NCBI GenBank assembly: GCA_002269645.1 | Contig: NIVC01001731.1 | Location: 1 to 64,000, forward strand | From: Macrostomum lignano | Taxonomy: Eukaryota | Direction of reading: 5' to 3' | Length of the DNA: 64,000 nucleotides | Shown: piece by piece, positions 2,372 through 27,979 of the stretch | Layout of the letters: each line of letters begins with the position of its first letter | Position numbering within the stretch: the stretch's first letter is position 1 | The notes under the pieces: model-generated | Seen by the model: only the letters and a program-made list of their open reading frames with translations | Databases searched by the model: none | What the model was told of the DNA's origin: nothing | Translations under genes and position numbers: made by a program

Positions 2372-3115
2372 TGATTTTAATGGGGGTGAGACTGGGCTGG
2401 GGTGACACTGAAAGAGATGGGTGAGAGTGGGGTGAGAGTGGGGAGAGACTGGGGAGAGACTGGGGGAGAGACTGGGTTGAGAAATGGGGAGAGACTGGGT
2501 TGAGAAATGGGGAGAGACTGGGGTGAGAAATGGGGGAGAGACTGGGGAGAGAATGGGGGAGAGTGGGGGAGAGACTGGGGAGAGACTGGGGTGAGACTGG
2601 GGTGAGACTGGGGAGAGACTGGGGGAGAGACTGGGTTGAGAAATGGGGGAGAGACTGGGGAGAGACTGGGGTGAGACTGGGGTGAGACTGGGGAGAGACT
2701 GGGGGAGAGACTGGGTTGAGAAATGGGGGAGACTGGGGTGAGAAATGAAGGAGAGACTAGGGTGAGAATGGGGGAGAGTGGGGGAGAGACTGGGGAGAGA
2801 CTGGGAAGAGACTGGGAAGAGACTGGGGTGAGACTGGGGGAGAGACTGTGGCAGAGACTGGGGTGAGACTGGGGTGAGACTGGAGAGAAACTTGCGCAGA
2901 GACTGGGGGAGAGACTGGGGGAGAGACTGGGGGAGAGACTGGGGGAGAGACTGGGGGAGAGACTGGGGGAGAGACTGGGAGAGAGACTGGGAGAGGGAGA
3001 GAGACTGGTAGAGACTGGGAGAGACTGGGAGAGACTGGGAGAGAGACTGGGAGAGACTGTGGGACAGACTGGGAGAGACTGTGGGACAGACTGGGAGAGA
3101 CTGGGAGAGACACTG
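2372..3115. repeat. G-rich tandem repeat (GAGACTGGGG/A)n
   Basis: Units of about 10-12 bp read directly; the ORFs 2312-3211 and 2757-3113 are artefacts of it. Confidence 0.95.
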
Positions 3116-3717
3116 GGGACTTATTGGAGGAGAAGGAGGTTGATAAGACCTAGATTTCACTTGCCAAAATGTTGCAAGCATCTTGGGGCCCTCACTGCAT
3201 GTGATCGTCACTCGTCAGCTGCTGTTCATTGCTCAGCGTCAGCATGATGAATGAGTGGGAGTGACGGAACTGAGCAGTCGCATTGAGTGCCATATCCGGC
3301 CACTCAGCGATGGCTGCGGTGAACTCTAAGGGAATCGGCGGCAACTCAGCCTCCGGGTTTGTGTCCAGTGAAAACAAAATTAATTGCTGCTATTCAGCAA
3401 AGCGGCTGCCAAGTGGAGACTGGCATCACACTTTCAGCTTCCCGATGTTGATCTGCGCAACCTGGCAATTTAGGAGACGCGCAAGCGGTTGCACGGAGAC
3501 AACACAGGACTGCAGATGTTAAAAATTTATTAATACTCTTGACTTAGTTGGGTAGTAATGGCGTCATTATTACTCATTTGATTTGCAATATTTTACGAAA
3601 TTTTATACGTACATGCGTTGGCTTCTACTTGCGGTAGTGCAGATAGACATATTTTCGTTTTATTTAAAAGCTTCAATACAATGGCTTTGTTGAGCTAAAT
3701 TTACAGTACACAGTACT

Positions 3718-4850
3718 GAGGAGAAAGAGGGGAGAGGGGAGAGGCGAGAGGAGAAAGGAGAGAGGAGAGAGGAGAGAGGAGAGAGGAGAGAGGAGAGAGG
3801 AGAAAGGAGAGAGGAGAGAGGAAAGAGGAGAGAGGATAGAGAAGAGAGGAGCGAGGAGCGAAGAGAGAGGAGAGAGGAGAGAGGAGAGAGGAGAGAGGAG
3901 AGAGGAGAGAGGAGAGAGGAGAGAGGAGAGAGGAGAGAGGAGAGAGGAGAGAGGAGAGAGGAGAGAGGATAGAGAAGAGAGGAGCGAGGAGCGAAGAGAG
4001 AGGAGAGAGGAGAGAGGAGAGAGGAGAGAGGAGAGAGAGAGGAGAGAGGAGAGAGGAGAGAGGAGAAAGGAGAGAGGAGAGAGGAGAGAGGAGAGAGGAG
4101 AGAGGAGAGATGAGAGAGGAGAGAGGAGAGAGGAGAGAGGATAGGGGAGAGAAGATAGAGAAGAGAGGAGCGAGGAGCGAAGAGAGAGGAGAGAGGAGAA
4201 AGGAGAGAGGAGAGAGGAGAGAGGAGAGAGGAGAGAGGAGAGAGGAGAGAGGAGAGAGGAGAGAGGAGAGAGGATAGGGGAGAGAGGATAGAGAAGAGAG
4301 GAGCGAGGAGCGAAGAGAGAGGAGAGAGGAGAGAGGAGAGAGGAGAGAGGAGAGAAGAGAGAGGAGAGAGGAGAAAGGAGAGAGGAGAGAGAGAAAGGAG
4401 AAGAGAGAGGAGAGAGGAGAGAGGAGAGAGGAGAGAGGAGAGAGGAGAGAGGAGAGAGGAGAGAGGAGAGAGGAGAGAGGAGAGAGGAGAGAGGAGAGAG
4501 GAGAGAGGAGAGAAGAGAGAGGAGAGAGGAGAAAGGAGAGAGGAGAGAGAGAAAGGAGAGAGGAGAGAGGAGAGAGGAGAGAGGAGAGAGGAGAGAGGAG
4601 AGAGGAGAGAGGAGAGAGGAGAGAGGAGAGAGGAGAGAGGAGAGAGGAGAAAGGAGAAAGGAGAAAGGAGAGAGGAGATAGGAGAGAGGAGAAAGGAGAG
4701 AGGAGAAAGGAGAGAGGAGAAAGGAGAGAGGAGAAAGGAGAGAGGATAGAAGAGAGAGAGAGGAGAAAATAGAGATTGGAGAAAATAGAGATTGGAGAAA
4801 ATAGAGATTGGAGAAAATAGAGATTAGAGAAAATAGAGATTGGAGAGAAG
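3718..4850. repeat. Polypurine microsatellite (GAGAG)n
   Basis: About 1.1 kb of almost pure A/G; the ORF 3673-4869 is spurious. Confidence 0.97.
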
Positions 4851-5648: not shown

Positions 5649-8374
5649 ATGGATTCTAAATTTTACTTTAGTATTCTCAGTTATCTGTTGGCATTGAATC
5701 ATTTCCTATCGGTAAGATTCTGGAGAACTTTGTCACTGTGTCTATCTTACTCAACAATTCTATAATTTCTCACTACACTTTCAACAGGTAGTGCAAGCAG
5801 CCGGCTACCTGCAGATTAAGTTCAACCGGTACACCAATCACGACGGCCGTGTCGAGGACGGCAGTCTCTGCGATCCGTTCGGTGCCACCTATGTTGGCGA
5901 TAATTGCGACCCCGTGTTCCGGCTGAGGGTCAACAAGGGGGGAGGAGGAGGGTGAGTGAGGGTTTTAATCTGCAGTCCATATTTCCTATTGCTGAGATCA
6001 GTTCTGCATGATTACCACGGCCTCATCTCTCTGCAGCGGTAATCTGCACGACTATCAGCAACCGGGCGTCTATGACAACCAAAACGCCATCGACTTTGGA
6101 TCAAAGTTCGGCAGCGTCCCGAATCCTGTGCCGATCGCAATGAACTTCCCTAATCCGGTAAGACTGTACTCATGAGGGAGAGGAGACTGTACTCACGAAC
6201 CGCTCTCGGAGCCCTTGAGTGATTCTTCATTGTGCATCACAATATTCTAATAAACTGTTTGCTACCAAATTTCGCAAACCGCTTTAGGGACAAGCGTACG
6301 TCAAAGTCGATGTAGTGGATAAAGACTCGTTTCCACCAGACGACCCGATGAGCAAATTCACCGCCTCGCTGCCTCTCATTGCCGACAATGTCAGGAGAGA
6401 CATGGAGCTGATCAGTCCAGCTCGACATCACCGACTATCCATAACTCACTGGTTCACCTGCTACACGAATTTCTACAGACAGGATTGCAACACCTATTGT
6501 GTAGCTCAGAACGACGATGTGAATGGTCATTATACCTGCGACTCGAATGGCAGAAGAGTGTGCATGATTGGTAAGACCGTCTGGTGATGGCTTGTTCTAT
6601 TACAGCAAGCAGTAATGCATGACGGAGTCGTTTAATCAGAGACTTGTTTGTAACAAATGAACTGCAGGTTGGACGGGAGCCGACTGCACCCAGCCGGACC
6701 CCTGCATCCCGAGTCCGTGTCTCAACGGAGCCACCTGCTCCAATGTCGGAGGAGTCGCCAGCTGCACCTGTCCGTCGGGCTTCACTGGTAGCCGATGCGA
6801 GACTGATATAGACGAGTGCAAGGCCGTCGACTCGCCCTGTCTGAACAACGCTACGTGTGAGAACACGATTGGCAGTTTCCACTGCAAGTGCTCACTCGGC
6901 TTCACTGGCGACCGCTGTGAGACCGACGTGAACGAGTGCGAGAGCAAGACGTCAGTGTGCCTAAACAACGGCACCTGTGAAAATACGTTCGGCGGCTTCA
7001 ACTGCAGCTGTCCGCCGGGTCTGACTGGGCACCGGTGCGAGCTCGATGTGGACGAGTGTGCAAACGGGACATCAGCTTGTGCGAACGGTGGTACCTGCGT
7101 GAATGTTTTTGGTAATTACACCTGCCAGTGCGACTCCGGATTCACTGGACCACTTTGCGAAGAAGACATCGACGAGTGCGCAGAGTCGCCATGCGTGAAC
7201 GGAGGAACTTGCGAGAATCGATTCGGAAGCTTCGAGTGCATCTGTCCTTCTGGATTTGCTGGAAGAGTGTGTGACAAAGACGAGGACGAGTGCTTGAGGA
7301 GTCCTTGCTCGAATGGCGGTAGCTGTGTGAACACCTTCGGTAACTTTAGTTGTTTGTGTTCGGCAGGATTTACAGGCAGTTTGTGCGATGAAGATATCGA
7401 CGAATGCCTGATGGCACCTTGCTTCAATGAGAGCACCTGCGTGAACACTATCGGAAACTTCACCTGTCAGTGCCCCCCAGGATTCGAAGGTAGACTTTGC
7501 GATGAAGACGTCGACGAATGCTCGAAGTTTCCGCCAAAGTGCCGCAACGGCGGAAACTGCACGAACACGCTTGGGAGCTTCCGTTGTACCTGCCCGACTG
7601 GACTGACCGGACGTCACTGCGAGCAGGACATCGACGAGTGCAAGCTGGCCGCCCCGCCGTGTCGAAACAACGGAAGCTGTCAGAACAGTTTTGGCGGATT
7701 TTCCTGCCGTTGCAGACCAGCGTTTAGAGGCAGACACTGTGAGATTCGCGCTGAGGCCTCGGTTGGGTCAACGACTGGTGAAGTCTGGAAGCTTCCTGTT
7801 TTCATTGGAATTCCAGTTGCAGCACTCGCCGTTGTCTCCATTGTCATCGTCGTTATCTGTAAAAGGAAATCGAGGTAAGAGACGACGAGCTGCAATATCA
7901 ATTTGGCGAATTGAATTCAACATAAATCTAACCCTGAAGAATGCAATTTATAGCCTGACATTAAAACGCCATTCCAGTCGCAGAAGCTGCAGTGGTAGCG
8001 GGAGCGTCAGAAGCACTGATGCTGCAAGCAATGATTATTATAACACTCATGTCGAATTCGGGTAGGTTCAATAATCTGGTAGTTTCCTCTTCATCAAGTA
8101 TGGTGAATAGCAAATATATTGCGCTAAACCATAACTGATCTTCCTTGTTCTTGTCTGCAGCTCGATTGAAGAGCCAACTAAAGAGCCAACTGAAGACCCA
8201 ACTGAAGACCCAACTGAAGACCCAACTGAAGACCCAACTGAAGACCCAACTGAAGACCCAACTGAAGACCCAACTGAAGACCCAACTGAAGACCCAACTG
8301 AAGACGACTACACCATCGCAGACAAAGCGGAGACACTCGAAAATGACTATTCAACTATAACCCTTTACGAGTAG
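5649..8374 (+). CDS. Delta-like protein 1 of cluster: signal peptide, C2/MNNL-like, DSL, 9 EGF, TM, tail with PTED repeats
   Basis: Exons 5649-5711, 5788-5951, 6037-6157, 6288-6570, 6668-7874, about 7978-8061, 8161-8374, all GT-AG and phase-consistent. DSL: [46 protein letters not shown]: [22 protein letters not shown]. Ends DYSTITLYE*. Acceptor of the first tail exon is uncertain. Confidence 0.88.
8178..8303 (+). repeat. 12-bp coding tandem repeat (CCAACTGAAGAC)n encoding PTED in the tail of Delta-like 1
   Basis: About 10 units, in frame with the predicted last exon. Confidence 0.85.
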
Positions 8375-10047
8375 ACTAGTGCCGACTTATATATATCATT
8401 ATGTCCATTTGTCAAGTCTTGATCAGAGATATTAAGGTAACTAGATGTCACCCAGAACTAAAATTGTGAAGAAATTGAGCGTCTGTTTCGTTTTTATGTC
8501 AATTCCTTTTCTTTCCTCGCGGGTTTTAGCCTCAAGATGGGATGCTACCGTACCTTCATCTACCCCTATCTTCATAACCCCTAAAGCACTGGATGTGAGA
8601 TCCCCTGATCTTCACAAGCCCTATATATCATAACCCATAATTTTCACAACCCATAAATTTCATAAACCCGAAAGATCATAACTGCGAAATTCCAGAGCAA
8701 GCATTTTCGTTTCCCCGAATCTTAAATTTTTTTAAATTTCACATTCACTGTAAGTTATGATATTTTTGCTTTGTGATTTTCTGGGTTTTTGAAATTTAGG
8801 GCTTGTACGCCCCCCTCCGGAGCGATTTTAAAATTTTACCATTGCAATAGCAATCGCAATCGACAGATACGAGCGTAGTTATCAGATACCTAAGCTAAAA
8901 AAATGACACCTAAGATGGCACTTTGTCTGTGAGCGTATGAGCTAGGCTGAAGTCTCAATTGCTAGCTAAGTCTCTAACTTCATCAACTTTCTTTAAATTT
9001 TTTTGTTCATAATGCTTCTCGTTTTATCCAGCATGTAAATATTTTTGCTTTGTAATATTCAGATATAAAAATCAGCCTTACCTTCTTCTTTAAGATTTCT
9101 GGGATTTCTGTATGGCTCTGTAAATATATGCTGTTGTTTTTAATGAGTCAAATTGATTTTCCATAAATTTTGGCTTCTCCTAGACACCGGTTTCTACGTA
9201 TTATTAGGTATTTCTACGATGCACTGTGCCGCCATGGTGACACAATGCAGTCAAACAAAATCGACACACATACAGTACCAGTGCATAGTCCTTGGGAATG
9301 TTTCAAGATGCCAAAATCATTGGATGCGGCCAGTCTAGAAGGTAATTTGAATTGGGCACTGGCACCTGAGCTAGTGTCATTAAAGGGGTGCCCAAAGGTC
9401 AGCCTAACCCGAAAGGGTCAGCCAAAATTTCTCTGCAAAGAAACATTCGCATTGCCGAAGAAATCGCATATACCTGGATGATGATGGATGATTAATAAGT
9501 TGAACTCTGTGACAAGTCATCATTATGAGGTTTTGGGACATTGTCTTTAGCTTTAATGTACAGCTAGCTATACATATATTGACAATGTTACCTCGGTATG
9601 CTTTGAGCAAAAGACGAAAGCAGACGATAGAAAGGCAGGTGAGTGTGGACAAGAGTTTCCATCAGAATTAAAAATAGTGCTGCTATTCAAAAAGGCTGAG
9701 GAATCTCTATGATGATTGTAACCAAAAAACAGTGTAAATGTAACGCAAAATGAGAAAATCCGACGCGGGACTTACGCTGCCGAGTTTCTCGTAAACTGCA
9801 AGTTAAGAGTAACTACTCTTTTACTAAGGCAGCGGCCCAAAATATGTGCTTGTGCCGAATTGAGATTGGTAAAAGATTAAAACGGCATCATAATATTTTT
9901 ACTCATAACATTCATTTTTATTCCCATTCAGCCGTCAATAATTCACTTACTCGCATTCTTTTTGCGGTAAAACACAACGGTAGCAATTACAATAACTAGC
10001 GATACTAACGTTATTAAAACTGTGCCTTTGAGGATAGTATTCATCGC

Positions 10048-11285
10048 TCATGCTGATGTCCCGTTTGCACACTCGTCCATATCGAGCTCGCACCGGTGCC
10101 CAGTCAGACCCGGCGGACAGCTGCAGATGAAACCGCCGAACGTATTTTTACAGGTGCCATGGTTGAGACACACTGACGTCTTGCTCTCGCACTCGTTCAC
10201 GTCGGTCTCACAGCGTTCGCCAGTGAAGCCGAGTGAGCACTTGCAGCGGAAACTGCCAATCGTGTTCTCACACGTAGCGTTGTTCAGACAGGGCGAGTCG
10301 ACGGCCTTGCACTCGTCGATATCAGTCTCGCATCGGCTACCAGTGAAGCCCGACGGACAGGTGCAGCTGGCGACTCCTCCGACATTGGAGCAGGTGGCTC
10401 CGTTGAGACACGGACTCGGGATGCAGGGGTCCGGCTGGGTGCAGTCGGCTCCCGTCCAACCTGCAGTTTTTTTATTTCAGGATTTTTTATTATTAAGAGG
10501 CTGTGTACCTTTTTTATTTACGATACCTATTTTACTCACGTGACGTTTATGATCCAAGGAAAGCTACATAGTAACTAATGGTCATTCTGTCACAGAACAT
10601 GTGATTGGTATTTCTTACCATTCATAGATTTTAATTTCTTTCGATTGCTTACCTATCAGGCAAACCTTGGCTCCTCAGGCAAACCTGAGCTGCAGTTGTA
10701 GTGGCCCTTGACTTTGTCATCCTGAGTTACACACAGCGTGTTGCAGTCAAGTCCGTAGTAGTTTGCATTGCAGCTGTACCAGTACTCCAGAGACAGTTTG
10801 TGCTTCGTTGGCCTTCTGACCAATTTGAGTTTTCTCTTGACTTTGTCGGCTCGAGCCACTAGCGCCGCTGAGAAGGAGTCTATCGGATCGTCCGACGTAA
10901 CTGGATCCTTGTCGACCACTGACACCTCAATGTGAATCGATCCCTGCTTAAAATTTAGTATTCATTGCGCGTTCTGTTTCAGGTGCTATCGCGATGAAAA
11001 TTGTAAGTCAGTGATTCAGATCTGGCTCATATTACCCTAGATTCAAGTCTAGAAATAGTTTTCACTGTCTGTTAAATGCTGCTCAGAGAACTCACCCTCC
11101 CGACACGATTCGATTCGATCGGCCACGAGTCGGAACTTCGGGTCGCATTTGTCAAAGTGATCGCAGCGGCTCCCGTCCTGACCCCGGCTGTCATCGTTGA
11201 TGTAGGACAGAAACCGCAGCGTCATGTAGCCGTTGCCATTGGCTACCCCTACGCCAGCTAGCAACAGGAGCAGCGACAGATTCAT
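10048..11285 (-). pseudogene. Delta-like paralogue 2, pseudogene
   Basis: Signal/C2 exon 11285-about 11097, DSL exon 10943-10653, EGF exon 10460-10048. Lesions: GLTYVG deleted, 5-bp duplication at 11107-11116, second C2 exon missing, 11-bp templated insertion at 10676-10686, TGA in EGF4, no TM. Confidence 0.85.
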
Positions 11286-12617
11286 TGTGGAGAATTATTT
11301 TTCGATTACTTTCTATACTAAGAATTTATGCAATTTTTCTTCACTCTCTTGTAGGGAAGTCGATAAAGCTTATTTTTACAGTTTAGGTGTTAATATTGGC
11401 AGATTTTTCTGCTTATCTTTCAAATTTTTCGCTTTTTTATTTTTTTTAAATTTCAACTGTGCTTCGTATTGCTTAAATAGGCACTGAAATTTCGTTTCGT
11501 TTGTAGCCGTTTAAAATTTTCGAAATCATGCCAAATAATTTTCTGCAGACAGCGATACAGCGATATTCAGATTGATCGATAATTTCTACCTTTTTTACTG
11601 CTATTTCTGTAGTTATGAGTTCCAATTTTAGATTTCGTACTAGCAATCAGATGTGCAGGGTGCGTGCATACTCCCCCAATGTATTCATTATGAACCTTTT
11701 TCACGTAAATAAAGTCTAGGGATGCATATATTTATCTTGTTATCTTGTTTCGATTGGTTACGAGCTATTGTTTAAGACCAAAACCAAAAAAATCGTTAGA
11801 ACGTTTGTCAGATGTTCGCACTAAAAATTATTTTCATTTTTGAAAGCTGCTCTTGTTAACTTGCAAGCAGGGGCCACAGAACGGAGTGGCGGCAGCCAAA
11901 GTCTATCACGTCCCGACACATGAAGTCGATTTACCACTGACAAATAGAAAAATCATGGAGAACACAAACTATTTTTAACCATATACTCGTACTTATGATT
12001 GAAGCCTTATGAAAATGAAATCCACAAGTTGAAGGCTTGGAAGGTGAGGCGTTTAAAATATACTGCACGTACTGTGCAAGATTTATTTTCTTGGAAATCT
12101 TTTCAGAGTGAAAAATTTTGCTTAGAAATCTTTCTTTTATTTTTAAAAATGACGGTCAGCATTAAAGACAATTTATAGATTGAGTCAAGATAGTTCGAGG
12201 CGTGAGTGCATCGTAAATGTACTTCGTAAGAGAAAATAACATACCATACACACTCGTAATTAGCTATTTATAAGCCATAGTTTTTAATAATAATGTACAT
12301 TCGGCTATTCCTATTTTTTCATTGTACAGACGTAACATATACAGACTCTACTTTAAGACATCAGCTAAAATAGATGACGAAAACTGCAAACTCGAAATAA
12401 TTGCACTGTCATAGTTGACGCTACTCAACCTATAACTGTCACATTCGGAACAGAAATAGAACTGATGAAAATAACGATAATACAAATAGATAAAATATAA
12501 CGCGTATTTAAATGGAATTTCTTAAATGAAATACTCGACAAGAAGCAGAGTTATTATTTTTCTCTGCTAGAATTATCGTGGCTAATACGAACTACAATTA
12601 ATCAATAGTTCTCCACT

Positions 12618-15450
12618 ATGATTTGCCAGCTATTTTTGTTGCTAATTGGCGTAAGCGTCGTTAATAGCAACGGCTACATGACGCTGAGGTTTCTGTCCTA
12701 CATCAACCATGACAGCCGGTGTCAGGACGGGACATACTGCGATCCCTTCGGCCTGACGTACGTCGGAGACAAGTGCGACCCGCAACTCAGACTGATTGCC
12801 GACCGATCTGTGCCTGGAGGGTGAGTTTACTGAGCAGTTTTAAAGTAGCAGCTCATTTCAACCATATTATTTAAACAAACAAACAAAAAAATCACCCACT
12901 GATTTCGTACAGAAACGGCCTGTTCGACTATCAGCAGCTGGGTGTCTACTGGGACACGGAGACCATCAATTTCGGAAGCCGATTCGGAGAAATCAGCAAT
13001 CCTGTGATCATCGCGATGAACTTTCAAAACCACGTAAGATATGCTCACAAGTTTTGTTAAAAAGTCGGCAAAAGTGACATTATTCTAGATAAATATTGAG
13101 TTAGCAGATGGGCAGATGTGCAACCGATAGCTCAGCCGCAGCTCAAGGCTGCGTACGGCTGTTCATTCCAAGGAATGGGGGTCGCTGGCACCCATTTTAC
13201 AGTTGGGTGAACTGAAGCAATACAGAGTTAAGTGTCTTGCTCAAGGACACAAATTGTTCCAGTGGGATCGAGAATCGAACCCCCGACCTTTAAGTCGACA
13301 GTCCGACGCTCTAACCTCTAGGCTACAACCCCTCTCTGCTAGGCTACAACCCCTCTCTGCTAGGCTACAACCCCAATAAAAAACAAAAACAAAACAGAAA
13401 CTAAAGCTACGAGCGTAAAACTAAAACTAAAACAGAAGCTAAAAAGAGCTGATTCCCAGCCCCATTCGGGTCTCATCACAATCCTTGGTCACGTCGAGGC
13501 AGACGCGTATTTAATAAAGCAAATCCCCCAATCAACACCAAATATTATCCAGGGGCACATTTACGTCACAGTATTGGCGGTAGACAAGGATCCCACTCCC
13601 CCGGACGATCCAATGGATACATTCTCTGCGGCGCTGGTGGCTCGAGCCGACAAAGTCAAGAGAAGAGTCGAAATGCTCAGTCAGCCAACAAACCACAAAC
13701 TGTCCATTGAGTACTGGTACAGCTGCCATGCAAACTACTACGGGCTTGACTGCAACACGTTCTGCCAACCACAGAATGACAACGTCAGGGGCCACTACAG
13801 CTGCAGCTCGGAGGGAGCTAAGATGTGCTTCACAGGTACCAAGCGATCATTTTATATAATTTCCAATAGTTTTTTATATTAATGTGAACTAAAAAGACAA
13901 TTAGTCATCGAAAAATAAAATAAATGAACTGCAGGTTGGACGGGAGTCGACTGTACTCAGCCGGACCCCTGCAACCCGAGTCCGTGTCTCAACGGAGCCA
14001 CCTGCTCCAATGTCGGAGGAGTTGCCAGCTGCACCTGTCCGTCGGGCTTCACTGGTAGCCGATGCGAGACCGATATCGACGAGTGCAAGGCCGTCGACTC
14101 GCCTTGCCTGAACAACGCTACGTGTGAGAACACGATTGGCAGTTTCCGCTGCAAGTGCTCACTCGGCTTCACTGGCGAACGCTGTGAGACCGACGTGAAC
14201 GAGTGCGAGAGCGAGACGTCAGTGTGTCTCAACCATGGCACCTGTAAAAATACGTTCGGCGGCTTCAACTGCAGCTGTCCGCCGGGTCTGACTGGGCACC
14301 GGTGCGAGCTCGATGTGGACGAGTGTGCAAACGGGACATCAGCTTGTGCGAACGGTGGTACCTGCGTGAATGTTTTTGGTAATTACACTTGCCAGTGCGA
14401 CTCCGGATTCACTGGACCACTTTGCGAAGAAGACATCGACGAGTGCACAGAGTCGCCATGCGTGAACGGAGGAACTTGCGAGAATCGATTCGGAAGCTTC
14501 GAGTGCATCTGTCCTTCTGGATTTGCTGGAAGAGTGTGCGACAAAGACGAGGACGAGTGCTTGAGGAGTCCTTGCTCGAATGGCGGTAGCTGTGTGAACA
14601 CCATCGGTAACTTTAGTTGTTTGTGTTCGGCAGGATTTACTGGCAGTTTGTGCGATGAAGATATCGACGAGTGCCTGATGGCACCTTGCTTCAATGAGAG
14701 CACCTGCGTAAACTCTATCGGAAACTTCACCTGTCAGTGCCCCCCGGGATTCGAAGGCAGACTCTGCGATAAAGACGTCGACGAGTGCTCGAAGTTTCCG
14801 CCAAAGTGCCGCAACGGCGGAAACTGCACGAACACGCTTGGGAGCTTCCGTTGTACCTGCCCGACTGGACTGATCGGAGGTCACTGCGAGCAGGACATCG
14901 ACGAGTGCAAGCTGGCCGCCCCGCCGTGTCGAAACAACGGAAGCTGTCAGAACAGTTTTGGCGGATTTTCCTGCCGTTGCGGACCAGCGTTTAGAGGCAG
15001 ACACTGTGAGATTCGCGCTGAGGCCTCGGTTGGGTCAACGACTGGGGAATCCTCGAAACTTCTCGTTTATATTCTAATTGGAGTTGGAGTACTCCTAATT
15101 GGCGCTGCTTCTGTTGCTGTTGGCATTGCTTTCTACAGAATTAGAAGAAGGTAAAAACAAATTCAATAACGTCAGAAAATAAATTTTATCACAAACAGTG
15201 CTGATGGGATTGCATTTACTAAATTACCCGCAGCGGCAGAAGCAATATCTCTGGAGCTGAGAACAATAAGACTGTATCTGACTGCGCTGCTGTCGAACAG
15301 GGGTAAGGAAAATATTTCTGCAACTTTCTGGTTTCGGGAATCCGAATGTTGACTGAGATAAATTTTTTTGAATTATTATTCTATTTTACTTTCAGGCTGA
15401 GTAACCCTGCCTACATGAGCACTTCAGAGATCGGCTTGCAAGAAAACTAA
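12618..15450 (+). CDS. Delta-like protein 3 of cluster: signal peptide, C2/MNNL-like, DSL, 9 EGF, TM, tail with NPxY
   Basis: Exons 12618-12820, 12913-13033, 13553-13835, 13935-15150, 15234-15302, 15396-15450, phase-consistent. DSL: [44 protein letters not shown]. Tail ends GLSNPAYMSTSEIGLQEN*. Confidence 0.88.
13110..13332 (-). mobile_element. tRNA-derived SINE in intron 2 of Delta-like 3
   Basis: Minus strand shows an A box (TAGCCTAGAGG), a B box (GGTTCGATTC) and a CCTTGAGCAAGACACTTAAC body; homologous to 20409-20682. Confidence 0.8.
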
Positions 15451-15989
15451 CAAAATTCTTGCCAATTGCGTGACTAGGTGCAAACTGCCTGTTACCTTGC
15501 ATGTTGCTAATGCTGAAGAAAACGTTGATATGAAGACATAGCCATGTAGCATGTAGCATGTAAATTTCTGCATCCAGAGGCCATTCCTAAAGGGCGGATG
15601 CGTTCATTTTTCTATATACGTAACTTTTGGAACTACAGAACTTCGGAACTACATGGCCACATTAAAACTTACGCAACTTTTTAATTATGTACACCTGTAA
15701 ATTTAATATTTTAGTTTTAACATTGGTTTTGTTCGTTATCATCCAACTTTTGTTTTAATTGCATTGTTTTAAACATTTCTCAAAGTTTTCAATCCTATTA
15801 TGTCTGTAAAGTTTCAACACGAACGAGCGAAATGAAGTATAAGGTCGCTGTTATCTTGCCCTCTTGGTTCACTAATCCTTGCAACTACGAGTAGAATTCC
15901 AACTGCACCAGGGGCTTTTGCACCAGATGGCGAGGGGCCTCATAGTTGTTGCCAGCCAGTTAGAGGAGCCGTGGTTCCCTTTGCCTGAT

Positions 15990-16130
15990 TGACTGATTGA
16001 CTGTATGACTGACTGACTGACTGACTGACTGACTGACTGACTGACTGACTGACTGACTGACTGACTGACTGACTGACTGACTGACTGACTGACTGACTGA
16101 CTGACTGACTGACTGACTGACTGATTGACT
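15990..16130. repeat. (GACT)n microsatellite
   Basis: About 30 near-perfect units. Confidence 0.95.
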
Positions 16131-17643
16131 TGTTGATTAAAGATCGAAGCTCAATACCATTTTAGTCTTTTACTCGTATTAAACAGAAAAATAACGAAAT
16201 CATTTTGAAATAGAGCACTTGGAACCAAACTGAGAAGAAATGATCAGATGGGATAGCTAAGTTATGAATTAATGACTTTTTTAATTTTAGCTCGTAATGT
16301 TTTTGGTGATTATTTCTGTTGAAATTAAATTAAAATCCAAAGTCCTTAAAGAGCATTTGATTTCGGAGGAAAGAATACAGAAAGAAAAAAATCAGAAAAA
16401 ACGAAGTGGAGAGTAAGGTACAAAAGGCAGCTCACTAAGCCACGTGCCATTAAACTGAAGTTCTATTTTGAAACTGTCAGGCTCTAAAATAGATCTCTAT
16501 TTAAACAATGGACTCCCAACATTTGGAAATTCCACGAGCTACTTCATAAAAAATCGTACCTGCATCTGTGCATGGTTACGTACATACCGTATGTACATAA
16601 TTTGTACATAGTATACGAGCGTAATTGCGTACATTACAGAATTTGATAAAAATAGGATAACTGTGAATGATCCAGTAAAGTAACTCGTACTAAAAAATGA
16701 GTTCGTCTGTTTATTTAAGTACTAAAACTCATATTTACACGCGGCAATGAGAGCTTACGCAGGAATACAGAATTTCTCGCTTCGTCAAATACTTGTCAAG
16801 CATGATATTAAAATTGCTTCTTTGTTATTGCATACTGGCACTGACGCCGTATCTAAAGGTAAGAATGTTATTTAGAACCCATGACAGATTTCTACGTTGG
16901 TGGCCCTTGGCGAATTGCATATAATTCTGACGCATAGGCAAAACTAGACACATTAATGTTCTGATTGACATGTATGCATTACCTTTTACGGCTCATTCGG
17001 GACCGGTCCGCCTTTCATCTGACCATAACGACAGACCAAACGCCGCTTAATTCCAGTTTTTTATATTTTCAGCAATCAGAATAACACACACAAAATTTCG
17101 TCGCGCTTTACTGATAGCTGATGCGAGACCGAAGTGGACGAGAAGAGAGTCAAAAGGAGAGAGGAGAAAGAGAGGAGAGAGGAGAGCGAAGAGACTAGAG
17201 ATTAGATGGGATAAGTGACAGCGAGGGCAACTTCTGAATAAAAATAGCGAGTAAATCGTAATAACCGATTTTACTCGATTTCACCACATTATACAAAACA
17301 GCTATTATTTGAATAAACAACTTTCATTAGTTTCTTAATGTTAGCCGATGCGAATATTTATTCGTTACGCTTTGCATATTATTTAAATATCCAAGTATCT
17401 ATTCAGAAGAGAGTTATTGTTTATCCCAAGTTGCATTCGTAAAAATAGAATATGATGCTTAAAAAGCAAACCTTCTCTTTAATCTTTTTAGTTGGCTGTA
17501 CGTATCCAAGTACTATGGACTCACTGCAGTCCTCGGCAGACTTTCTGTTTACTAATTTGATATACATATTTTTGAAATTCTACAAAAGCTTTTGTGCCCC
17601 CGAGTTGCAATAACAATGAACACTTGACAGGGTTCATTTACAG

Positions 17644-17811
17644 CAGGGTTTGGCAAACTTTGCCTCGCGGGCCCCATGCGACCCGCTAAGCCTCTCTATC
17701 CGGCCCTCGGGTCCTTTGAAAGGTTTGTGTTTCTTCTCATCTCTCTTCTCTGTAATCTTGTCTCTCCTCTTTGGCCCGCAGCCATTATGGTAAGAAGTTT
17801 GCCCACCCCAG
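17644..17811. mobile_element. Probable hAT-type MITE
   Basis: Imperfect TIRs CAGGGTTTGGCAAACTT / AAGTTTGCCCACCCCAG with subterminal GCGGGCC / GGCCCGC; flanks ATTTACAG and ATTATACAG resemble a decayed 8-bp TSD. Confidence 0.5.
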
Positions 17812-18027
17812 ATTATACAGCCTGAGGACAATAAATGTTTTATATTTAGAAATGTTGCGCAATATTGTGCAATGTGTCTGACTTAGTTCCTTATTAATGT
17901 TTCATATTTATAGGTATTGCCGTGGATAATCCGTGGAATTTCCTTTCAAAGCAGCGCCAAATACTTATAAAATTTGAATACATAAAAAGGCAGTTTAGGC
18001 GGCTGCTCAATTCGAAAAAACCTCACC

Positions 18028-19767
18028 ATGACTTCTAAATTGTCTTTCGGCATTTGCAGTTGCCTGTTGGGATTGACTCATTTCCTATCGGTAAGGTTCT
18101 TGAGAACTTTGACGCTGTGTCTAGCTCACTTGAATTCTATAATTTCTCACTACATTCAACAGGCAGTTCAGGGAGCTGGCTACCTGCAGATCAGGTTCAA
18201 CCGGTACACCAATCATGACGGCCGTGTCGAGGACGGCAGTCTCTGCGACCCGTTCGGTGCCACCTATGTTGGCGATAATTGCGACCCCGTGTTCCGGCTG
18301 AGGGTCAACAAGGGGGGAGGAGGAGGGTGAGTGAGGGTTTTAATCTGCAGTCCATATTTCCTATTGCTGAGATCAGTTCTGCATGATTACCACGGCCTCA
18401 TCTCTCTGCAGCGGTAATCTGCACGACTATCAGCAACCGGGCGTCTATGACAACCAAAACACCATCGACTTTGGATCAAAGTTCGGCAGCGTCCCAAATC
18501 CTGTGCCGATCGCGATGAACTTCCCTAATCCGGTAAGACTGTACTCATGAGGGAGAGGAGACTGTACTCACGAACCGCTCTCGGAGCCCTTGAGTGATTC
18601 TTCATTGTGCATCACAATATTCTAATAAACTGTTTGCTACCAAATTTCGCAAACCGCTTTAGGGACACGCGTACGTCAAAGTCGATGTAGTGGACAAAGA
18701 CACGTTTCCACCAGACGACCCGATGAGCAAATTCACCGCCTCGCTGCCTCTCATTGCCGACAATGTCAGGAGAGACATGGAGCTGATCAGTCCGGCTCGA
18801 CATCACCGACTATCCATAACTCACTGGTTCACCTGCTACACGAATTTCTACGGACAGGATTGCAACACCTATTGTGTAGCTCAGAACGACGATGTGAATG
18901 GTCATTATACCTGCGACTCGAATGGCAGAAGAGTGTGCATGATTGGTAAGACCGTCTGGTGATGGCTTGTTCAATTACAGCAAGCAGTAATTCAGAACGG
19001 AGTTCTTTACATCTGTGTTGCAGGATTTACTGGCACTCTGTGCAATGAAGATATCGACGAGTGCCTGATGTCGTCACCTTGCTCCAATGAGAGCACTTGT
19101 GTGAACACTATCGGAAACTTCAAATGCATGTGTCCTCCGGGGTTCGAAGGTAGACTCTGCGATGAAGATATCAACGAGTGCTCGGAGTCTCCGCCAAAGT
19201 GTCGCAACGGCGGAAACTGCACGAACACGGTTGGGAGCTTCCGTTGTACCTGTCCGACTGGACTGACCGGACGTCACTGTGAGGAGGACATCGACGAGTG
19301 CAAGCTGGCCGCCCCGCCGTGTCGAAACAACGGAAGCTGTCAGAACAGCTTTGGCGGATTTTCCTGCCGTTGCGGACCAGCGTTCAGAGGCAGACGCTGT
19401 GAGATTCGCGCTGAGGCCTCGGTTGGGTCTCCAACTGGGGCGCCCTGGAAACTGGCAGTAATCATCGTCTCAGCAGTCCTGGGGACAGCGATTATCGCTG
19501 TCATAATTGCGCTTGTTGTCTATCAAAGAAGGAATAGGTAAGTAGGAGTAAATACGGTGCTTACTATAGGTTAAATTCATTGATTAGCTTGTAAATGGCT
19601 GAAAAACACATATTTTCAGTAGCAGAGGCACTGCTAGCAACGAGGATAAAGAAAGCAGGTAAGAAGGCGTCGTTTGTTTGTTGCATTACAGAGTCTAAGT
19701 TTGACGAATGCCTCTTCTTTAAATGAATTTTTATTCCAGATTTGATAACGAAGCATACGAATCATAA
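18028..19767 (+). CDS. Delta-like protein 4 of cluster: signal peptide, C2/MNNL-like, DSL, only 3 EGF, TM, tail ending FDNEAYES
   Basis: Exons 18028-18090, 18163-18326, 18412-18532, 18663-18945, 19024-19537, 19620-19658, 19740-19767, phase-consistent. The head is near-identical to gene 1; the EGFs correspond to EGF7-9 of gene 1. Confidence 0.85.
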
Positions 19768-20408: not shown

Positions 20409-20682
20409 GGGTTGTAGCCTAGTGGGTAAGAGTGTCGGATTCACGACTGAAAGGTCGGGGGTTCGATTCTCGACCCACACGGAACAATTTGTGTTCTTGA
20501 GCAAGACACCTAACTCTGTATTTCTTCAGTTCACACAGCCCTGGGTGGGTGCCAGCATTAGCTGGGGTAATTGAGGGTAGCTCGCATGTGGCGACCCACC
20601 AGTCTTTGGACTGAACAGCCGTAAGCAGCCTTCAGATACGCCGCGCAATAGCTGCGGCTGAGCTGTCGGTTACACATCTGCC
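20409..20682 (+). mobile_element. tRNA-derived SINE, same family as 13110-13332
   Basis: A box TAGCCTAGTGG, B box GGTTCGATTC, TTGAGCAAGACACCTAAC body, shared 3' end GCTGCGGCTGAGCTGTCGGTTACACATCTGCC. Confidence 0.8.
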
Positions 20683-22744: not shown

Positions 22745-25588
22745 TTAATACCTGACTGCCTGTGAAATACGTTCGCTGTTCGTGATGCCGGCGACAGTCA
22801 GTATGAACGCTACGATCAGAATGACACCACCGACAGTTGCTAAGGCAATGATGAGGGTCTGCTGATTCGGCTCCGCAGGTTTCTCTGCTGTCTCGCAAAG
22901 TCGTCCGCTGAATCCATCGGGACACTGGCATCTGTAGCTGCCAAATTCGTTCACGCAGGTGCTGCCGCTCGCGCAGTCGGACTTGCCCTCGCACTCGTCT
23001 ACATCGATCTCGCATCGGCTGCCTGTTAATCCCACGGCACAGATGCAGTTGAATCCGCCGAAGGTGTTCAGGCAGGTGCCGCCGATGCCGCAAGGTGAGG
23101 CCGATATCTCGCACTCGTCAGCGTCTGCCTCGCAGCGACTGCCGACAAAGTTTCCTGGACAGAGACAACTGAACCCGCCGAATGTGTTTTGACAAGTGCC
23201 TCCGTTCAGACACAGCGAAGTCCCATTCTCACACTCATTCACATCTGCCTCACAACCGGCGCCTGTGAAGTTTGGCGGACAACTGCAGTTGAATGCACCG
23301 AATGTGTTCAGACAGGTGCCTCCATTATGACACGGGGAAGTGCCTGAATCACACTCGTTCACGTCCCAGCCGCAGAGGCTTCCAGTAAAGCCCGAAGGAC
23401 AGTTGCAGTTGAATCCGCCAAAGGTGTTAATACAGGTACCTCCGTTCAGACAGAGTGAAGTTCCTGTGTCGCACTCGTCCACGTCAGTCTCACAAAGACT
23501 GCCATTAAAGTTTGGGGACAACTGCAGTTGAATGCACCGAATTTGTTTAGACAGGTGCCTCCATTCTGACACGGGAAAGTGCCTGAATCACACTCGTTCA
23601 CGTCCGAGCCGCAGAGGCTGCCAGTAAAACCCGAAGGACAGTTGCAGTTGAATCCGCCAAAGGTGTTAATACACGTACCTCCGTTCAGACAGAGTGAGGT
23701 TCCTGTGTCGCACTCGTTCACGTCAGTCTCACAAAGACTGCCATTAAAGTTCGGCGGGCAGCTGCAGTTGAATCCGCCAAAAGTGTTGATGCAGGTGCCA
23801 TTGTTCTGGCACGGTGGAATGTCTAGAGCGCATTCGTTCAGATCCTCACAACGACTGCCAGTAGAGTTTTCCGGGCAGACACAATCGAATCCTCCATAGG
23901 TGTTTAGGCACGTTCCTCCATTCGAGCAGGTCGGCAGATCAAGTTCGCATTCGTTGACATCCGTCTCGCAGCGGCTTCCGTTGAAGTTTGGCGTGCAGGT
24001 GCAGTTGGCAATGTCGCCGACATTGGAACAGGTGCCTCCGTTGTAACACGGGCTTTCGAGACACGGAATCAGTCGGGTGCAGTTGGTGCCCATCCAGTCT
24101 GTAAACGTATTAAAAGTAAAAATGCAAACATTTCAGCAGCAGTCAACAAACTAAAAGACACATATTAGTAGTGACCTCGAAGCTCACCTGACATGCAAAC
24201 TTTGTTGCCATTAGAATCGCAGGTATAGTGGCCTGTAGAGTCATTGTGAGGCTTGCAAAATGTGTTGCAGTCCAGTCCGTAGTAATGGCTGTGGCAGGTG
24301 TACCAATAGGTAATTGATAGCCTGTGGTGCCTCGGAGAACTGTAGATGTCCATGTTTCTCCTTACTGAGTCAGCCCGAGCCGGTAGACTTGCGTAGAAAT
24401 GGTCCATATGGTCGTCGTAAAATTCGTCTTTGTCCATCGCGACAACCGTTATTTGTATGCTGCCCTGTTAATGTTAGAAATGTTGAGATGTGGCGTTCTG
24501 GTCACAGATATATTGTACTGTAGGTAGCTATACAAACTAAAAGTACTAAGATTGCATACCGGATTCCAGTAGGGCATGTCTATAACGACTGGATTGGCAA
24601 TTTCACCGAACCTGCCGCCGAAGTTGACAATGTCCGAATCCCCATAGTATCCAGCTTGACCGTAGTTAAATAGATTGTTCCTGTGGGCAGGAATTTCGAA
24701 TGGCAATCGTTAACTCAAGGTAAATTCAATAACTCTCCCGCCAAAACTACTAAGTAGAATTAGACTAGTAATCTTAGCCCCCCACAAGGGTAGACAACGG
24801 AAGAAGTAGTAAGATTAAAAACTCTTAGAGATTGATCTCTAATCCTTGGCAGCTCAGAATTCCCCCTTGAGCCAGTGAAATCCTAATAAATTCTTCACGG
24901 AAATCCCTAGGGAATGCCTTAGGAATGCCTTGGGAATCTCAGCATTCTACATTTATCGATGGCATTTCAGCAATTCCAGCGTAGTCTTAGCAACCCCCCC
25001 AAAAATGAGCTATATAATCTCAGCAAAATATCGAGGCACAGCTAAATTTTTTCAATCCACAATTATTAAACAAAGCATCCCATATTATTTAATCTACAGT
25101 GCTTGTTGGTTTAGTTGCCAAAAACAAATTCAAACAGGGTCTTTTTAACATTACACCGATGGATGGATGGTTAGCATGTCTGTCGGATTGCTGTAGGGAG
25201 CGAAAGCACAAGCAGAACTTATTAATCTACCGTGAACATCTCTTTCTAAAGGCCCTCGTCAGCAGCAATAATTTACCCTCCGGCGTTGGTCCTGTCAGCA
25301 AAGAGTTGGAATTTCGGATCGCAGGCTGACTCTCTCCAGGAAAAGAACGTGTCGCAGTACGTCCCGTCCGAGGCTCTGCTGTCATGATTATAGTAGGTGT
25401 GGAATTGTACATGCATGGACCCAGTACCGCCGACCTGTAGCAGATTGCGATTAAGGAACCATTGTAATCAAAGTTTGCCATTGCCACACCTAGTACGTTT
25501 GCAAAAGGATTTGCGAGTAACTTACGGTTCCACACAAAAGAACGATTAAAAAAGCGACCGTCGATGAGATTGAATTTAAACGGCACAT
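22745..25588 (-). CDS. Delta-like protein 5 of cluster (divergent): signal peptide, C2/MNNL-like, DSL, 10 EGF, TM; -1 frameshift in EGF5
   Basis: Exons 25588-25526 ([21 protein letters not shown]), 25434-25277, 24680-24560, 24464-24188, 24098-22752. DSL: [43 protein letters not shown]. One C is missing from a C-run near 23515. Tail exons probably lie at about 22400-22670 but were not resolved. Confidence 0.8.
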
Positions 25589-27977: not shown

Positions 27978-27979
27978 TA

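What the first reader, a model, noticed from the sequence alone, without database searches (positions are those of the whole stretch)
5788..19440. Head, stalk and tail modules are shuffled between the Delta-like paralogues
Genes 1 and 4 are near-identical from about 5800-6620 vs 18175-18990, including introns, while exon 1 and intron 1 are visibly more diverged. Genes 1 and 3 have different heads (and differ by an intron) yet share a near-identical EGF exon (about 6655-7775 vs 13922-15045), starting a few bases into the preceding intron and ending at GTTGGGTCAACGACTGG just before the TM. Pseudogene 2 has a gene-3-type head on the same stalk. Result: head A + stalk X + tail 1, head B + stalk X + tail 3, head A + short stalk X + tail 4, head C + stalk Y + tail 5. 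Inference: ongoing gene conversion or unequal crossover creates new binding-head/signalling-tail combinations.
Basis: partly seen in the sequence, partly recalled or inferred. Interest (0 to 1): 0.75.

Follow-up and report, generated by a model that had tools for sequence, protein, structure and literature searches.

The report
Mosaic Delta-like gene cluster, flatworm
Five neighbouring Delta-like (Notch-ligand-type) genes of the flatworm Macrostomum lignano really are patchworks: blocks of about 0.8 and 1.1 kb were copied between otherwise very different neighbours, which is the well-known process of gene conversion in a gene family where it had not been described.

Summary
The window is Macrostomum lignano contig NIVC01001731.1, positions 1-64000. 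It carries five C2-DSL-EGF-TM paralogues: G1, pseudogene P2, G3, G4 and G5.

- **G1 and G4:** 11 differences in 797 nt (5820-6616 vs 18195-18991, three introns included), against 83 in 317 columns in the flanks.
- **G1 and G3:** about 97% identical over 6652-7778 vs 13919-15045. Their heads are 58-60% identical and their TM regions 57%.
- **Synonymous sites:** G1-G3 dS is saturated in the head, 0.088 in the stalk and 1.6 in the tail.
- **Trees:** the head groups G1+G4 (100% bootstrap); the stalk groups G1+G3 (97%).
- **P2:** it is disabled in all three subgenome copies, yet its stalk stays 96-97% identical to G1 and G3.

The best explanation is two-sided, module-bounded interlocus gene conversion. 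The junctions are the same in the two other subgenome copies of the cluster. This rules out mis-assembly and dates the main events before the subgenomes diverged.

Evidence for continuing exchange is weaker. It is also partly confounded by short-read polishing of the assembly. This is a new example of a known phenomenon, of moderate to low interest.

The parts
5649..8375 (+). G1: Delta-like gene, head A + stalk X (9.5 EGF) + TM/tail 1. Exons are 5649-5711, 5788-5951, 6037-6157, 6288-6570, 6668-7874, 7978-8061 and 8161-8375 (711 aa). The tail carries an (EDPT)n repeat.
   Evidence: All introns are GT-AG and the reading frame is open. Pfam finds DSL and EGF domains. A 712-aa orthologue is annotated in the copy on NIVC01000092.1.
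5820..6616 (+). Head-core tract shared with G4, running from exon 2 (from codon ~11) to the first 46 nt of intron 4.
   Evidence: There are 11 differences in 797 nt, against 83 in 317 columns in the flanks. Fixed G1-vs-G4 differences across subgenome copies number 0 inside the tract, 37 upstream and 5 downstream.
18195..18991 (+). Partner of the head-core tract, in G4.
   Evidence: The offset from G1 is constant at 12375 nt.
6652..7778 (+). Stalk X tract shared with G3 (and, for 6652-7084, with P2). It covers the last 16 nt of intron 4 plus all EGF repeats up to ...GTTGGGTCAACGACTGG.
   Evidence: Identity is about 97% and dS is 0.088. In all three subgenome copies, every variable site in the flanks is a fixed G1/G3 difference.
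13919..15045 (+). Partner of the stalk X tract, in G3.
   Evidence: The offset from G1 is 7267 nt.
6946..6969 (+). Small island inside the stalk (EGF3) holding the only five fixed G1-vs-G3 differences ([10 protein letters not shown] vs ESETSVCLNH).
   Evidence: Site patterns across the six stalk copies.
9948..11285 (-). P2: pseudogene with a G3-type head (B'), stalk X truncated after 3.5 EGF (10460-10044), an in-frame TGA, and then its own TM.
   Evidence: The window copy lacks exon 2 and has an 8-nt frameshifting insertion. The TGA before the TM is present in all three subgenome copies, and the other copies carry other lesions. Stalk identity is 96.6-96.9% to G1 and G3.
12618..15450 (+). G3: head B + stalk X + TM/tail 3 (with an NPAY motif). 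Exons are 12618-12820, 12913-13033, 13553-13835, 13935-15150, 15234-15302 and 15396-15450 (648 aa).
   Evidence: The model is 100% identical to the annotated protein PAA64635.1.
18028..19767 (+). G4: head A + short stalk (3.5 EGF) + TM/tail 4. Exons are 18028-18090, 18163-18326, 18412-18532, 18663-18945, 19024-19537, 19620-19658 and 19740-19767 (403 aa).
   Evidence: GT-AG gene model. It has the length and position of the annotated PAA64636.1. The same DSL-to-EGF fusion (CMIGFTGTLC) occurs in the copy on NIVC01002031.1, protein P0002.
19009..19024 (+). Deletion junction in G4. The equivalent of G1 6635-7354 is missing, and the new acceptor tgtgttgcag derives from the coding sequence tgtgttcggcag.
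   Evidence: Alignment. BLAST aligns 7355-7778 with 19014-19438 at 90%.
22752..25588 (-). G5: head C + stalk Y + TM 5, not exchanged with the other genes. The EGF exon is 24098-22752 and holds an internal 240-nt tandem duplication (units start at about 23751 and 23512).
   Evidence: Gene model. The window copy has a 1-nt deletion near 23520; the other two copies are intact. The internal units evolve in concert.

Best explanation
This is a lineage-specific cluster of five Delta/Serrate-type (C2-DSL-EGF-TM) genes in Macrostomum lignano. The paralogues are old: synonymous sites are saturated between head types and between tails.

Two blocks have been overwritten by non-allelic (interlocus) gene conversion.
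- An ~0.8-kb head core was exchanged between G1 and G4.
- An ~1.1-kb EGF stalk was exchanged among G1, G3 and the pseudogene P2, which lies in inverted orientation.

Each tract has two sharp ends, and these ends coincide with module borders: just inside exon 2, in intron 4, and at the last EGF repeat before the TM. G4's short stalk arose separately, by an in-frame 720-nt deletion that turned coding sequence into a splice acceptor.

**Shown:** the tracts, their borders, their presence at synonymous and intronic sites, the conflicting trees, and the same borders in all subgenome copies. It follows that the main events predate the divergence of the subgenomes.

**Inferred:**
- The mechanism was non-crossover repair using a paralogue as template.
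- The borders are kept where they are because the flanks are too diverged to support heteroduplex extension, and/or because selection removes conversions that reach into diverged heads and tails.
- Low-level exchange continues.
For: - **Module identities:** head exons are 58-60% identical for G1-G3, 94.5-98% for G1-G4 and 77-78% for P2-G3. The stalk is 96-97% for G1-G3-P2 and 91% for G1/G3-G4. TM regions are at most 57%.
- **dS:** for G1-G3, the head is saturated (pS 0.74), the stalk is 0.088 and TM+tail is 1.6. For G1-G4, the signal peptide is 0.56, the head 0.069 and the C-terminal stalk 0.29.
- **Breakpoint statistics:** 11/797 against 83/317 differences, P = 3.5e-37. The maximum chi-square is 182, against at most 23 in permutations.
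- **Trees:** the head gives {G1,G4} at 100% bootstrap and the stalk gives {G1,G3} at 97%.
- **Independent copies:** two further collinear copies of the cluster sit on other contigs. In the copy where the gene pair can be compared (the third copy's G4 is only a remnant), there are 37 fixed G1/G4 differences upstream of 5803, none in 5820-6597 and 5 in 6617-6630. All three copies have fixed G1/G3 differences on both sides of the stalk and only 5 inside it.
- **Pseudogene P2** is disabled in all three copies but keeps a stalk 96-97% identical to the functional genes. Purifying selection cannot explain that.
- **P2 is inverted** relative to G1 and G3. Exchange with it without rearrangement implies conversion rather than crossover.
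- **Post-divergence signals:** the SKF variant pair is shared only by G1 and G3 of the window copy. One G1 copy has a patch from the neighbouring EGF repeat. G5's internal units are more alike within a copy (6-12 differences) than between orthologous units (15-17).
Against: - Inside the stalk, tract-based tests did not detect discrete post-divergence events. The PHI-like test gave P = 0.25. The GENECONV-like runs that looked significant were caused by one private patch.
- The SNP patterns are so reticulate (62% of site pairs fail the four-gamete test) that part of them may be an artefact. The assembly was Pilon-polished with Illumina and RNA-seq reads.
- Converted modules show no excess GC3 over unconverted ones.
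- The direction of transfer (donor and acceptor) could not be determined without an outgroup.
- The diverged TM region groups G1 with G3 (94.6% bootstrap, on a short and poor alignment), while G1's 5' end is of the G4 type. An older chimeric origin of G1 by unequal crossover in intron 4 may therefore underlie the conversions.
Confidence: 0.8

Rival explanations
1. Chimeric genes were born by unequal crossover or partial duplication, that is, exon shuffling at birth. On this view G1 arose as a fusion of a G4-type 5' half and a G3-type 3' half joined in intron 4, and the patterns reflect the age of those duplications rather than later conversion.
For: G1's 5' flank, exon 1 and intron 1 align only with G4, at 75-80%. 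Its TM region is slightly closer to G3 ({G1,G3} at 94.6%). The two tracts abut within about 35 nt in intron 4.
Against: Each near-identical block is bounded on both sides by much older sequence within the same gene pair. For G1-G4 the divergence is 20% upstream, 1.4% in the core and 9% in the stalk, and the tail is unalignable. For G1-G3 the stalk is 3% diverged and the adjoining TM 43%. A single junction cannot produce that pattern. P2 is inverted yet shares the stalk. This rival can explain at most an old layer beneath the conversions.
Confidence: 0.12
2. Assembly or polishing artefact. The mosaics would be mis-joins or collapsed repeats of a difficult neopolyploid PacBio assembly, or short-read polishing copied variants between paralogues.
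For: Mlig_3_7 is a Canu assembly (errorRate 0.04) polished with Pilon using Illumina and RNA-seq reads. Nine stalk copies of 95-97% identity exist in the assembly. The SNP patterns inside the stalk show no dependence on distance. The window's G5 has a lone 1-nt deletion in a C run that the other two copies lack.
Against: The same module junctions occur on three separate contigs. The head A + stalk X + TM 1 combination is also present in a protein from the independent ML2 assembly, A0A1I8FHT9. The blocks are only 0.8-1.1 kb long, so they should be spanned by long PacBio reads (inference). Polishing cannot turn 40%-diverged sequence into 97% identity over 1.1 kb. The artefact remains a real caveat only for the fine-scale SNP reticulation.
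Confidence: 0.04
3. No exchange at all. Strong purifying selection keeps the stalk and head core similar, while heads and tails diverge under relaxed or positive selection.
For: dN/dS in the shared blocks is low, about 0.17-0.2. EGF repeats are cysteine-constrained.
Against: Identity extends equally to synonymous sites (dS 0.07-0.09 against saturated), to three introns and to 16 nt of intron 4. It also extends to a pseudogene that is disabled in all three subgenome copies. Selection does not preserve such sites.
Confidence: 0.02

Closest known systems
Regional gene conversion in clustered protocadherin genes (fugu, zebrafish, human)
   Same: Both involve tandem paralogues for single-pass cell-surface proteins. 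In both, one part of the ectodomain is homogenised to very high nucleotide identity, synonymous sites included, while the N-terminal recognition part stays diverged. Trees built on the converted part are misleading (PMC1852091).
   Different: The protein family differs (C2-DSL-EGF Notch-ligand type). Here two different tracts link different gene pairs, and a pseudogene and an inverted copy take part. There is no GC3 excess in converted parts, whereas fugu Pcdh shows one. The cluster is small (five genes) and sits in a neopolyploid flatworm.
Canonical DSL Notch ligands (Delta/DLL1/DLL4, Serrate/Jagged)
   Same: The architecture is the same: signal peptide, C2 (MNNL), DSL, EGF repeats, TM, short tail. 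The Pfam DSL domain scores 49-63 bits against a cut-off of 24.2. An AlphaFold model (pLDDT 83.7) best matches DLL1, DLL4, Jagged-1/2 and fly Serrate C2-DSL-EGF structures, with E from 1e-24 to 1e-15.
   Different: The Pfam MNNL model is not matched. The DSL loop reads AQNDD, PQNDN or PHNDS where the family consensus in my alignment reads PRDD. There is no DOS-type EGF1-2 signal above threshold. The tails are very short. The cluster is a lineage-specific expansion with only about 23-34% identity to ligands of other phyla. Notch binding is untested.
Pseudogene-involving conversion systems (e.g. CYP21A2/CYP21A1P; cited from general knowledge)
   Same: A disabled neighbouring copy shares a near-identical block with functional genes and could act as donor or acceptor.
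   Different: No direction of transfer and no phenotype are known here. P2's stalk is itself a mosaic of G1-like and G3-like parts.

Membership tests
DSL (Delta/Serrate/LAG-2) Notch-ligand family | DSL domain with its six-cysteine pattern | tested here: met
   PF01414 scores 50.7 bits (G1), 55.6 (G3), 49.4 (G4) and 63.0 (G5) against a cut-off of 24.2. The DSL cysteines are invariant in the 27-sequence alignment.
DSL (Delta/Serrate/LAG-2) Notch-ligand family | N-terminal C2 (MNNL) domain preceding the DSL domain | tested here: met
   The Pfam MNNL model (PF07657) was not hit at E<=0.01. However, the AF2 model of the G4-type protein P0002 (pLDDT mostly >85 over residues 30-340) matches C2-DSL-EGF crystal structures of DLL1 (4xbm), DLL4 (5mvx), Jagged-1 (4cc0, 5uk5) and fly C2-DSL-EGF1 (7alk, TMt 0.70). 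The feature is therefore met at fold level only.
DSL (Delta/Serrate/LAG-2) Notch-ligand family | Tandem EGF repeats, a single TM and a cytoplasmic tail | tested here: met
   Pfam finds 8-9 EGF or EGF_CA stretches in G1 and 3 in G4. A hydrophobic helix is predicted at residues 361-389 of P0002. TM segments are visible in all translations.
DSL (Delta/Serrate/LAG-2) Notch-ligand family | Conserved receptor-facing DSL loop (consensus C-x-PRDD-xx-GHY) and DOS-type EGF1-2 | tested here: not met
   The loop reads [12 protein letters not shown] (G1/G4), CQPQNDNVRGHY (G3) and [11 protein letters not shown] (G5), against the consensus PRDD. PF21700 (EGF_DL_JAG) scores only 20.8 bits, below its cut-off of 27, and not at EGF1-2. 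The role of these residues in binding is recalled from the literature and was not tested here.
DSL (Delta/Serrate/LAG-2) Notch-ligand family | Binds and activates a Notch receptor | not testable with these tools
   This needs binding or signalling assays.
Interlocus gene conversion / concerted evolution | A high-identity tract with two sharp borders inside otherwise diverged paralogues | tested here: met
Interlocus gene conversion / concerted evolution | Identity includes synonymous sites, introns and non-functional copies | tested here: met
   dS contrasts. Introns 2 and 3 and part of intron 4 are included. The pseudogene P2 shares the stalk.
Interlocus gene conversion / concerted evolution | Conflicting phylogenies of adjacent segments | tested here: met
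   The head gives {G1,G4} at 100% and the stalk gives {G1,G3} at 97%.
Interlocus gene conversion / concerted evolution | Paralogues within one genome copy are more alike than orthologues between copies (exchange after divergence) | tested here: inconclusive
   In the stalk, paralogous distance (~4.2%) is about equal to orthologous distance (~4.3%), with reticulate patterns and a few variants shared within one copy. Tract tests were not significant, and polishing is a confounder. The feature is clearly met only for G5's internal repeats.
Interlocus gene conversion / concerted evolution | GC3 enrichment of converted regions (biased gene conversion) | tested here: not met
   GC3 is 0.60-0.69 in all heads and 0.60-0.64 in all stalks, whether converted or not. 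This is a frequent but not obligatory signature.
Chimeric gene formed by a single unequal crossover | One junction, with each side uniformly related to one parent | tested here: not met
   Both blocks are two-sided, and several divergence levels occur within one gene pair. An older single-junction layer cannot be excluded.

The most novel reading that the evidence does not exclude
The cluster could be a cassette system. The conserved EGF stalk, present in direct and inverted copies and also kept in a pseudogene, would serve as a recombination platform. Through it, diverged C2-DSL heads and cytoplasmic tails would be recurrently re-paired, by conversion or by inversion between the inverted stalks of G1/P2/G3. 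Across the three subgenomes this would give a rapidly evolving combinatorial repertoire of Notch-ligand-like surface proteins under diversifying selection.
Probability: 0.08. Interest if true: 0.6.

Novelty: new member of a known kind. Interest (0 to 1): 0.3.

Why it matters
- **Gene-family inference:** phylogenies of Macrostomum Delta-like genes built on full-length sequences or on the EGF region will be wrong. Only the head or tail modules carry the duplication history.
- **Gene conversion in general:** this is a clean invertebrate example of conversion tracts that stop at protein-module borders, as in clustered protocadherins, with three subgenome copies serving as internal replicates.
- **The M. 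lignano model:** the locus holds near-identical 0.8-1.1 kb blocks in nine or more copies. RNAi, in situ probes, CRISPR guides and short-read mapping against the stalk or head core will cross-react between genes. The SNP-level sequence of this region in Mlig_3_7 should be treated with caution.
- **Limits:** it does not open a new mechanism or resolve a long-standing question.

Tried and rejected
- **PHI-like test.** Tested spatial clustering of compatible sites in the stalk: P = 0.25, so no signal.
- **GENECONV-like test.** The lowest pairwise permutation P values (0.001-0.002) come from runs spanning a single private patch of one G1 copy. They are not evidence of pairwise tracts.
- **GC3 as a sign of biased conversion.** Converted and unconverted modules do not differ.
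- **Within-cluster conversion in the G4 remnant of NIVC01000092.1.** I asked whether it is closest to its own cluster's G1. Site patterns do not support this.
- **Head-core tree across subgenomes.** It groups the two G4 copies (82% bootstrap). So the 98.5% G1-G4 identity in the window is not clear evidence of a window-specific recent event. The other copy's G1-G4 pair is also only about 4% diverged.
- **Transcript or other-assembly support by exact-protein look-up.**
  - P0001: not on record.
  - G4: found only on its own contig.
- **SINE-like element.** An Rfam scan and a tRNA scan found nothing.
- **Literature.** Searches for Macrostomum with Notch/Delta/DSL, and with gene conversion, found nothing relevant.


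Full report
**Identity of the locus**

The window is eukaryotic, with short GT-AG introns. My model of gene 3 is 100% identical to Macrostomum lignano protein PAA64635.1 (BOX15_Mlig028014g1). Gene 4 has the length and position of PAA64636.1, which lies at 18028-19767 of contig NIVC01001731.1. The window is therefore the first 64 kb of that contig, in assembly Mlig_3_7.

**Gene models**

| Gene | Strand, span | Size | Status |
|---|---|---|---|
| G1 | +, 5649-8375 | 7 exons, 711 aa | intact |
| P2 | -, 11285-9948 | n/a | disabled |
| G3 | +, 12618-15450 | 6 exons, 648 aa | intact |
| G4 | +, 18028-19767 | 7 exons, 403 aa | intact |
| G5 | -, 25588-22752 plus tail | n/a | frameshifted in this copy |

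All five encode a signal peptide, an N-terminal domain, a DSL domain, EGF repeats and a TM with a short tail. Pfam finds DSL above threshold in the four genes tested (G1, G3, G4, G5), plus EGF and EGF_CA repeats. An AlphaFold model of the G4-type protein (pLDDT 83.7) best matches the C2-DSL-EGF crystal structures of DLL1, DLL4, Jagged-1/2 and fly Serrate. 'Delta-like' and 'binding head' are thus reasonable labels.

Two cautions apply. The Pfam MNNL model is not matched. The DSL loop also departs from the family consensus: AQNDD, PQNDN or PHNDS instead of PRDD. Notch binding is untested.

**The observation**

*G1 vs G4.*
- 5820-6616 vs 18195-18991: 11 differences in 797 nt. This block spans most of exon 2, exons 3-4, introns 2-3 and the first 46 nt of intron 4.
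- Flanks: 83 differences or gaps in 317 columns (Fisher P = 3.5e-37).
- Two-breakpoint chi-square: 182, against at most 23 in permutations.
- Exon 1, intron 1 and the 5' flank are about 20% diverged.

*G1 vs G3.*
- About 97% identity from 6652, 16 nt inside intron 4, to 7778, the end of GTTGGGTCAACGACTGG.
- After 7778 the sequences are barely alignable.
- G3 lacks the signal-peptide intron.

*Module identities*

| Module | Pair | Identity |
|---|---|---|
| Head exons | G1-G3 | 58-60% |
| Head exons | G1-G4 | 94.5-98% |
| Head exons | P2-G3 | 77-78% |
| Head exons | any gene vs G5 | 51-63% |
| Stalk | G1-G3-P2 | 96-97% |
| Stalk | G1/G3-G4 | 91% |
| TM | all pairs | at most 57% |

*G4's short stalk.* It is an in-frame deletion of the equivalent of G1 6635-7354. 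Former coding sequence (tgtgttcggcag) became the splice acceptor (tgtgttgcag). The DSL domain is thereby fused directly to the seventh EGF repeat (CMIG|FTGTLC).

**Why this is exchange and not constraint or artefact**

Synonymous divergence differs by an order of magnitude or more between adjacent modules of the same gene pair.

| Pair | Module | dS |
|---|---|---|
| G1-G3 | head | saturated (pS 0.74) |
| G1-G3 | stalk | 0.088 |
| G1-G3 | TM + tail | 1.6 |
| G1-G4 | signal peptide | 0.56 |
| G1-G4 | head | 0.069 |
| G1-G4 | C-terminal stalk | 0.29 |

- Introns are included in the tracts.
- Four-taxon trees conflict. The head gives {G1,G4} at 100% bootstrap and the stalk gives {G1,G3} at 97%.
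- P2 carries an in-frame TGA before its TM in all copies, plus copy-specific lesions: an exon-2 deletion, an 8-nt insertion or a 10-nt deletion. Even so, its stalk remains 96-97% identical to G1 and G3.
- P2 lies in inverted orientation. Exchange with it without rearrangement implies conversion rather than crossover.

**Independent replicates**

The same assembly holds two more collinear copies of the whole cluster, on NIVC01002031.1 and NIVC01000092.1. This fits the three subgenomes reported for this neopolyploid: 3-copy blocks cover about 70% of Mlig_3_7, with a SNP rate of 2.2% (PMC10733133).

- *G1 vs G4.* In the copy where the pair can be compared, there are 37 fixed G1-vs-G4 differences upstream of 5803. 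There are none in 5820-6597, and 5 again in 6617-6630. The third copy's G4 is only a remnant.
- *G1 vs G3.* In all three copies the flanks of the stalk consist of fixed differences. Inside the stalk only five sites are fixed, clustered at 6946-6969.
- *Other assembly.* A protein from the independent ML2 assembly (A0A1I8FHT9) also joins head A, stalk X and TM 1.

Mis-assembly is therefore excluded for the module structure. The main events must predate the divergence of the subgenomes.

**Is it ongoing?**

The evidence is mixed.

*For continuing exchange.*
- Paralogous and orthologous stalk distances are equal (about 4.2-4.3%).
- 47 informative sites show 62% four-gamete incompatibility, with Rmin = 24.
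- Five derived sites are shared only by G1 and G3 of the window copy. They include two adjacent replacements (SKF instead of SES).
- One G1 copy carries a 45-70 nt patch resembling the next EGF repeat.
- G5's two internal 240-nt units differ by 6-12 sites within a copy but by 15-17 between orthologous units.

*Against, or cautionary.*
- The PHI-like test (P = 0.25) and the run-length tests are not significant.
- The head-core tree still groups the two G4 copies (82% bootstrap).
- Mlig_3_7 was polished with Pilon using Illumina and RNA-seq reads (PMC5730564). That could shuffle SNPs among 95-97% identical copies.
- GC3 shows no conversion bias.

**Mechanism and alternatives**

The best explanation is interlocus gene conversion with tracts of 0.8 and 1.1 kb whose borders sit at module borders. 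Two factors probably hold the borders in place. The flanks are too diverged to extend heteroduplex, and conversions reaching into specialised heads or tails may be selected against. Both points are inference.

An older layer is possible. G1's 5' end is of the G4 type, while its diverged TM is marginally closer to G3. G1 may therefore have begun as an unequal-crossover chimera joined in intron 4. A single junction, however, cannot account for the two-sided tracts.

**Comparison with what is known**

The closest analogue is regional gene conversion in clustered protocadherins. There the 3' ectodomain part of tandem paralogues is homogenised while the 5' recognition part stays diverged (PMC1852091). 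I found no report of this for Macrostomum or for DSL ligands.

**Verdict**

It is a new member of a known kind, with interest of about 0.3.

Noticed in passing
window 23500-23530 (- strand), in the G5 EGF exon: The window copy of G5 has a 1-nt deletion in a C run (tgtccccaaac where the paralogous unit reads tgcccgccgaac), which frameshifts the EGF exon. The copies on NIVC01002031.1 (99.8% identical) and NIVC01000092.1 are intact. It is either a subgenome-specific null allele or a PacBio indel error.
   Followed up: partly
window 23272-23751 (- strand); L002 and L003 equivalents: G5 contains a tandem duplication of a 240-nt unit (two EGF repeats). The two units are more alike within a subgenome copy (6-12 differences) than orthologous units are between copies (15-17). 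This points to intragenic concerted evolution or repeated unequal crossover.
   Followed up: yes
L002 15500-16900 (NIVC01000092.1): In this subgenome copy G4 is only a remnant. The 5' flank and exon 1, part of the DSL exon with intron 4, and the tail are present. Exons 2-3 and most of the stalk are deleted. Gene content of the cluster therefore differs between subgenomes.
   Followed up: partly
window 10950-11090 vs L003 5640-5860: P2 has lost exon 2 (about 215 nt) in the window copy and in NIVC01000092.1, but not in NIVC01002031.1. This groups the first two as sister subgenome copies, which agrees with the G1 5' flank distances (2.5% against 8-9%).
   Followed up: partly
window 13184-13331 and 20409-20556 (inverted): A ~150-nt interspersed repeat (85% identical copies) sits in G3 intron 2 and downstream of G4. 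In G3 it is followed by three copies of ctaggctacaacccctctctg. It looks SINE-like, but neither ARAGORN nor Rfam recognises it.
   Followed up: partly
window 8167-8305: The last exon of G1 holds a 12-nt microsatellite (11.6 copies, 97% matches) that encodes an (EDPT)n repeat in the cytoplasmic tail (Pfam PT repeat, 29 bits). Tail 3 has an NPAY motif and tail 4 an NEAY motif.
   Followed up: no
window 26511-31684 (+): An apparently intact non-LTR retrotransposon lies just upstream of G5. ORF1 is 488 aa with no Pfam hit. ORF2 is 1236 aa with AP endonuclease, reverse transcriptase and RNase H domains. The region is GC-rich (56-63%). At least 26511-29986 is also present, at about 98-99% identity, in the copy on NIVC01002031.1, where the contig ends.
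   Followed up: partly
window 1-4850: The first ~4.8 kb is a series of short-period satellites (21-, 20-, 11/12-, 7- and 16-nt units, for example 150 copies of AGAGGAG) with strong GC and AT skew. It ends about 800 nt upstream of G1.
   Followed up: no
window 36519-37751 (-) and 47395-48453 (+): There are two long ORFs outside the cluster. One has a Mab-21 C-terminal domain (weak, 25 bits). The other has a BCNT/Cfdp1 domain (99 bits).
   Followed up: no
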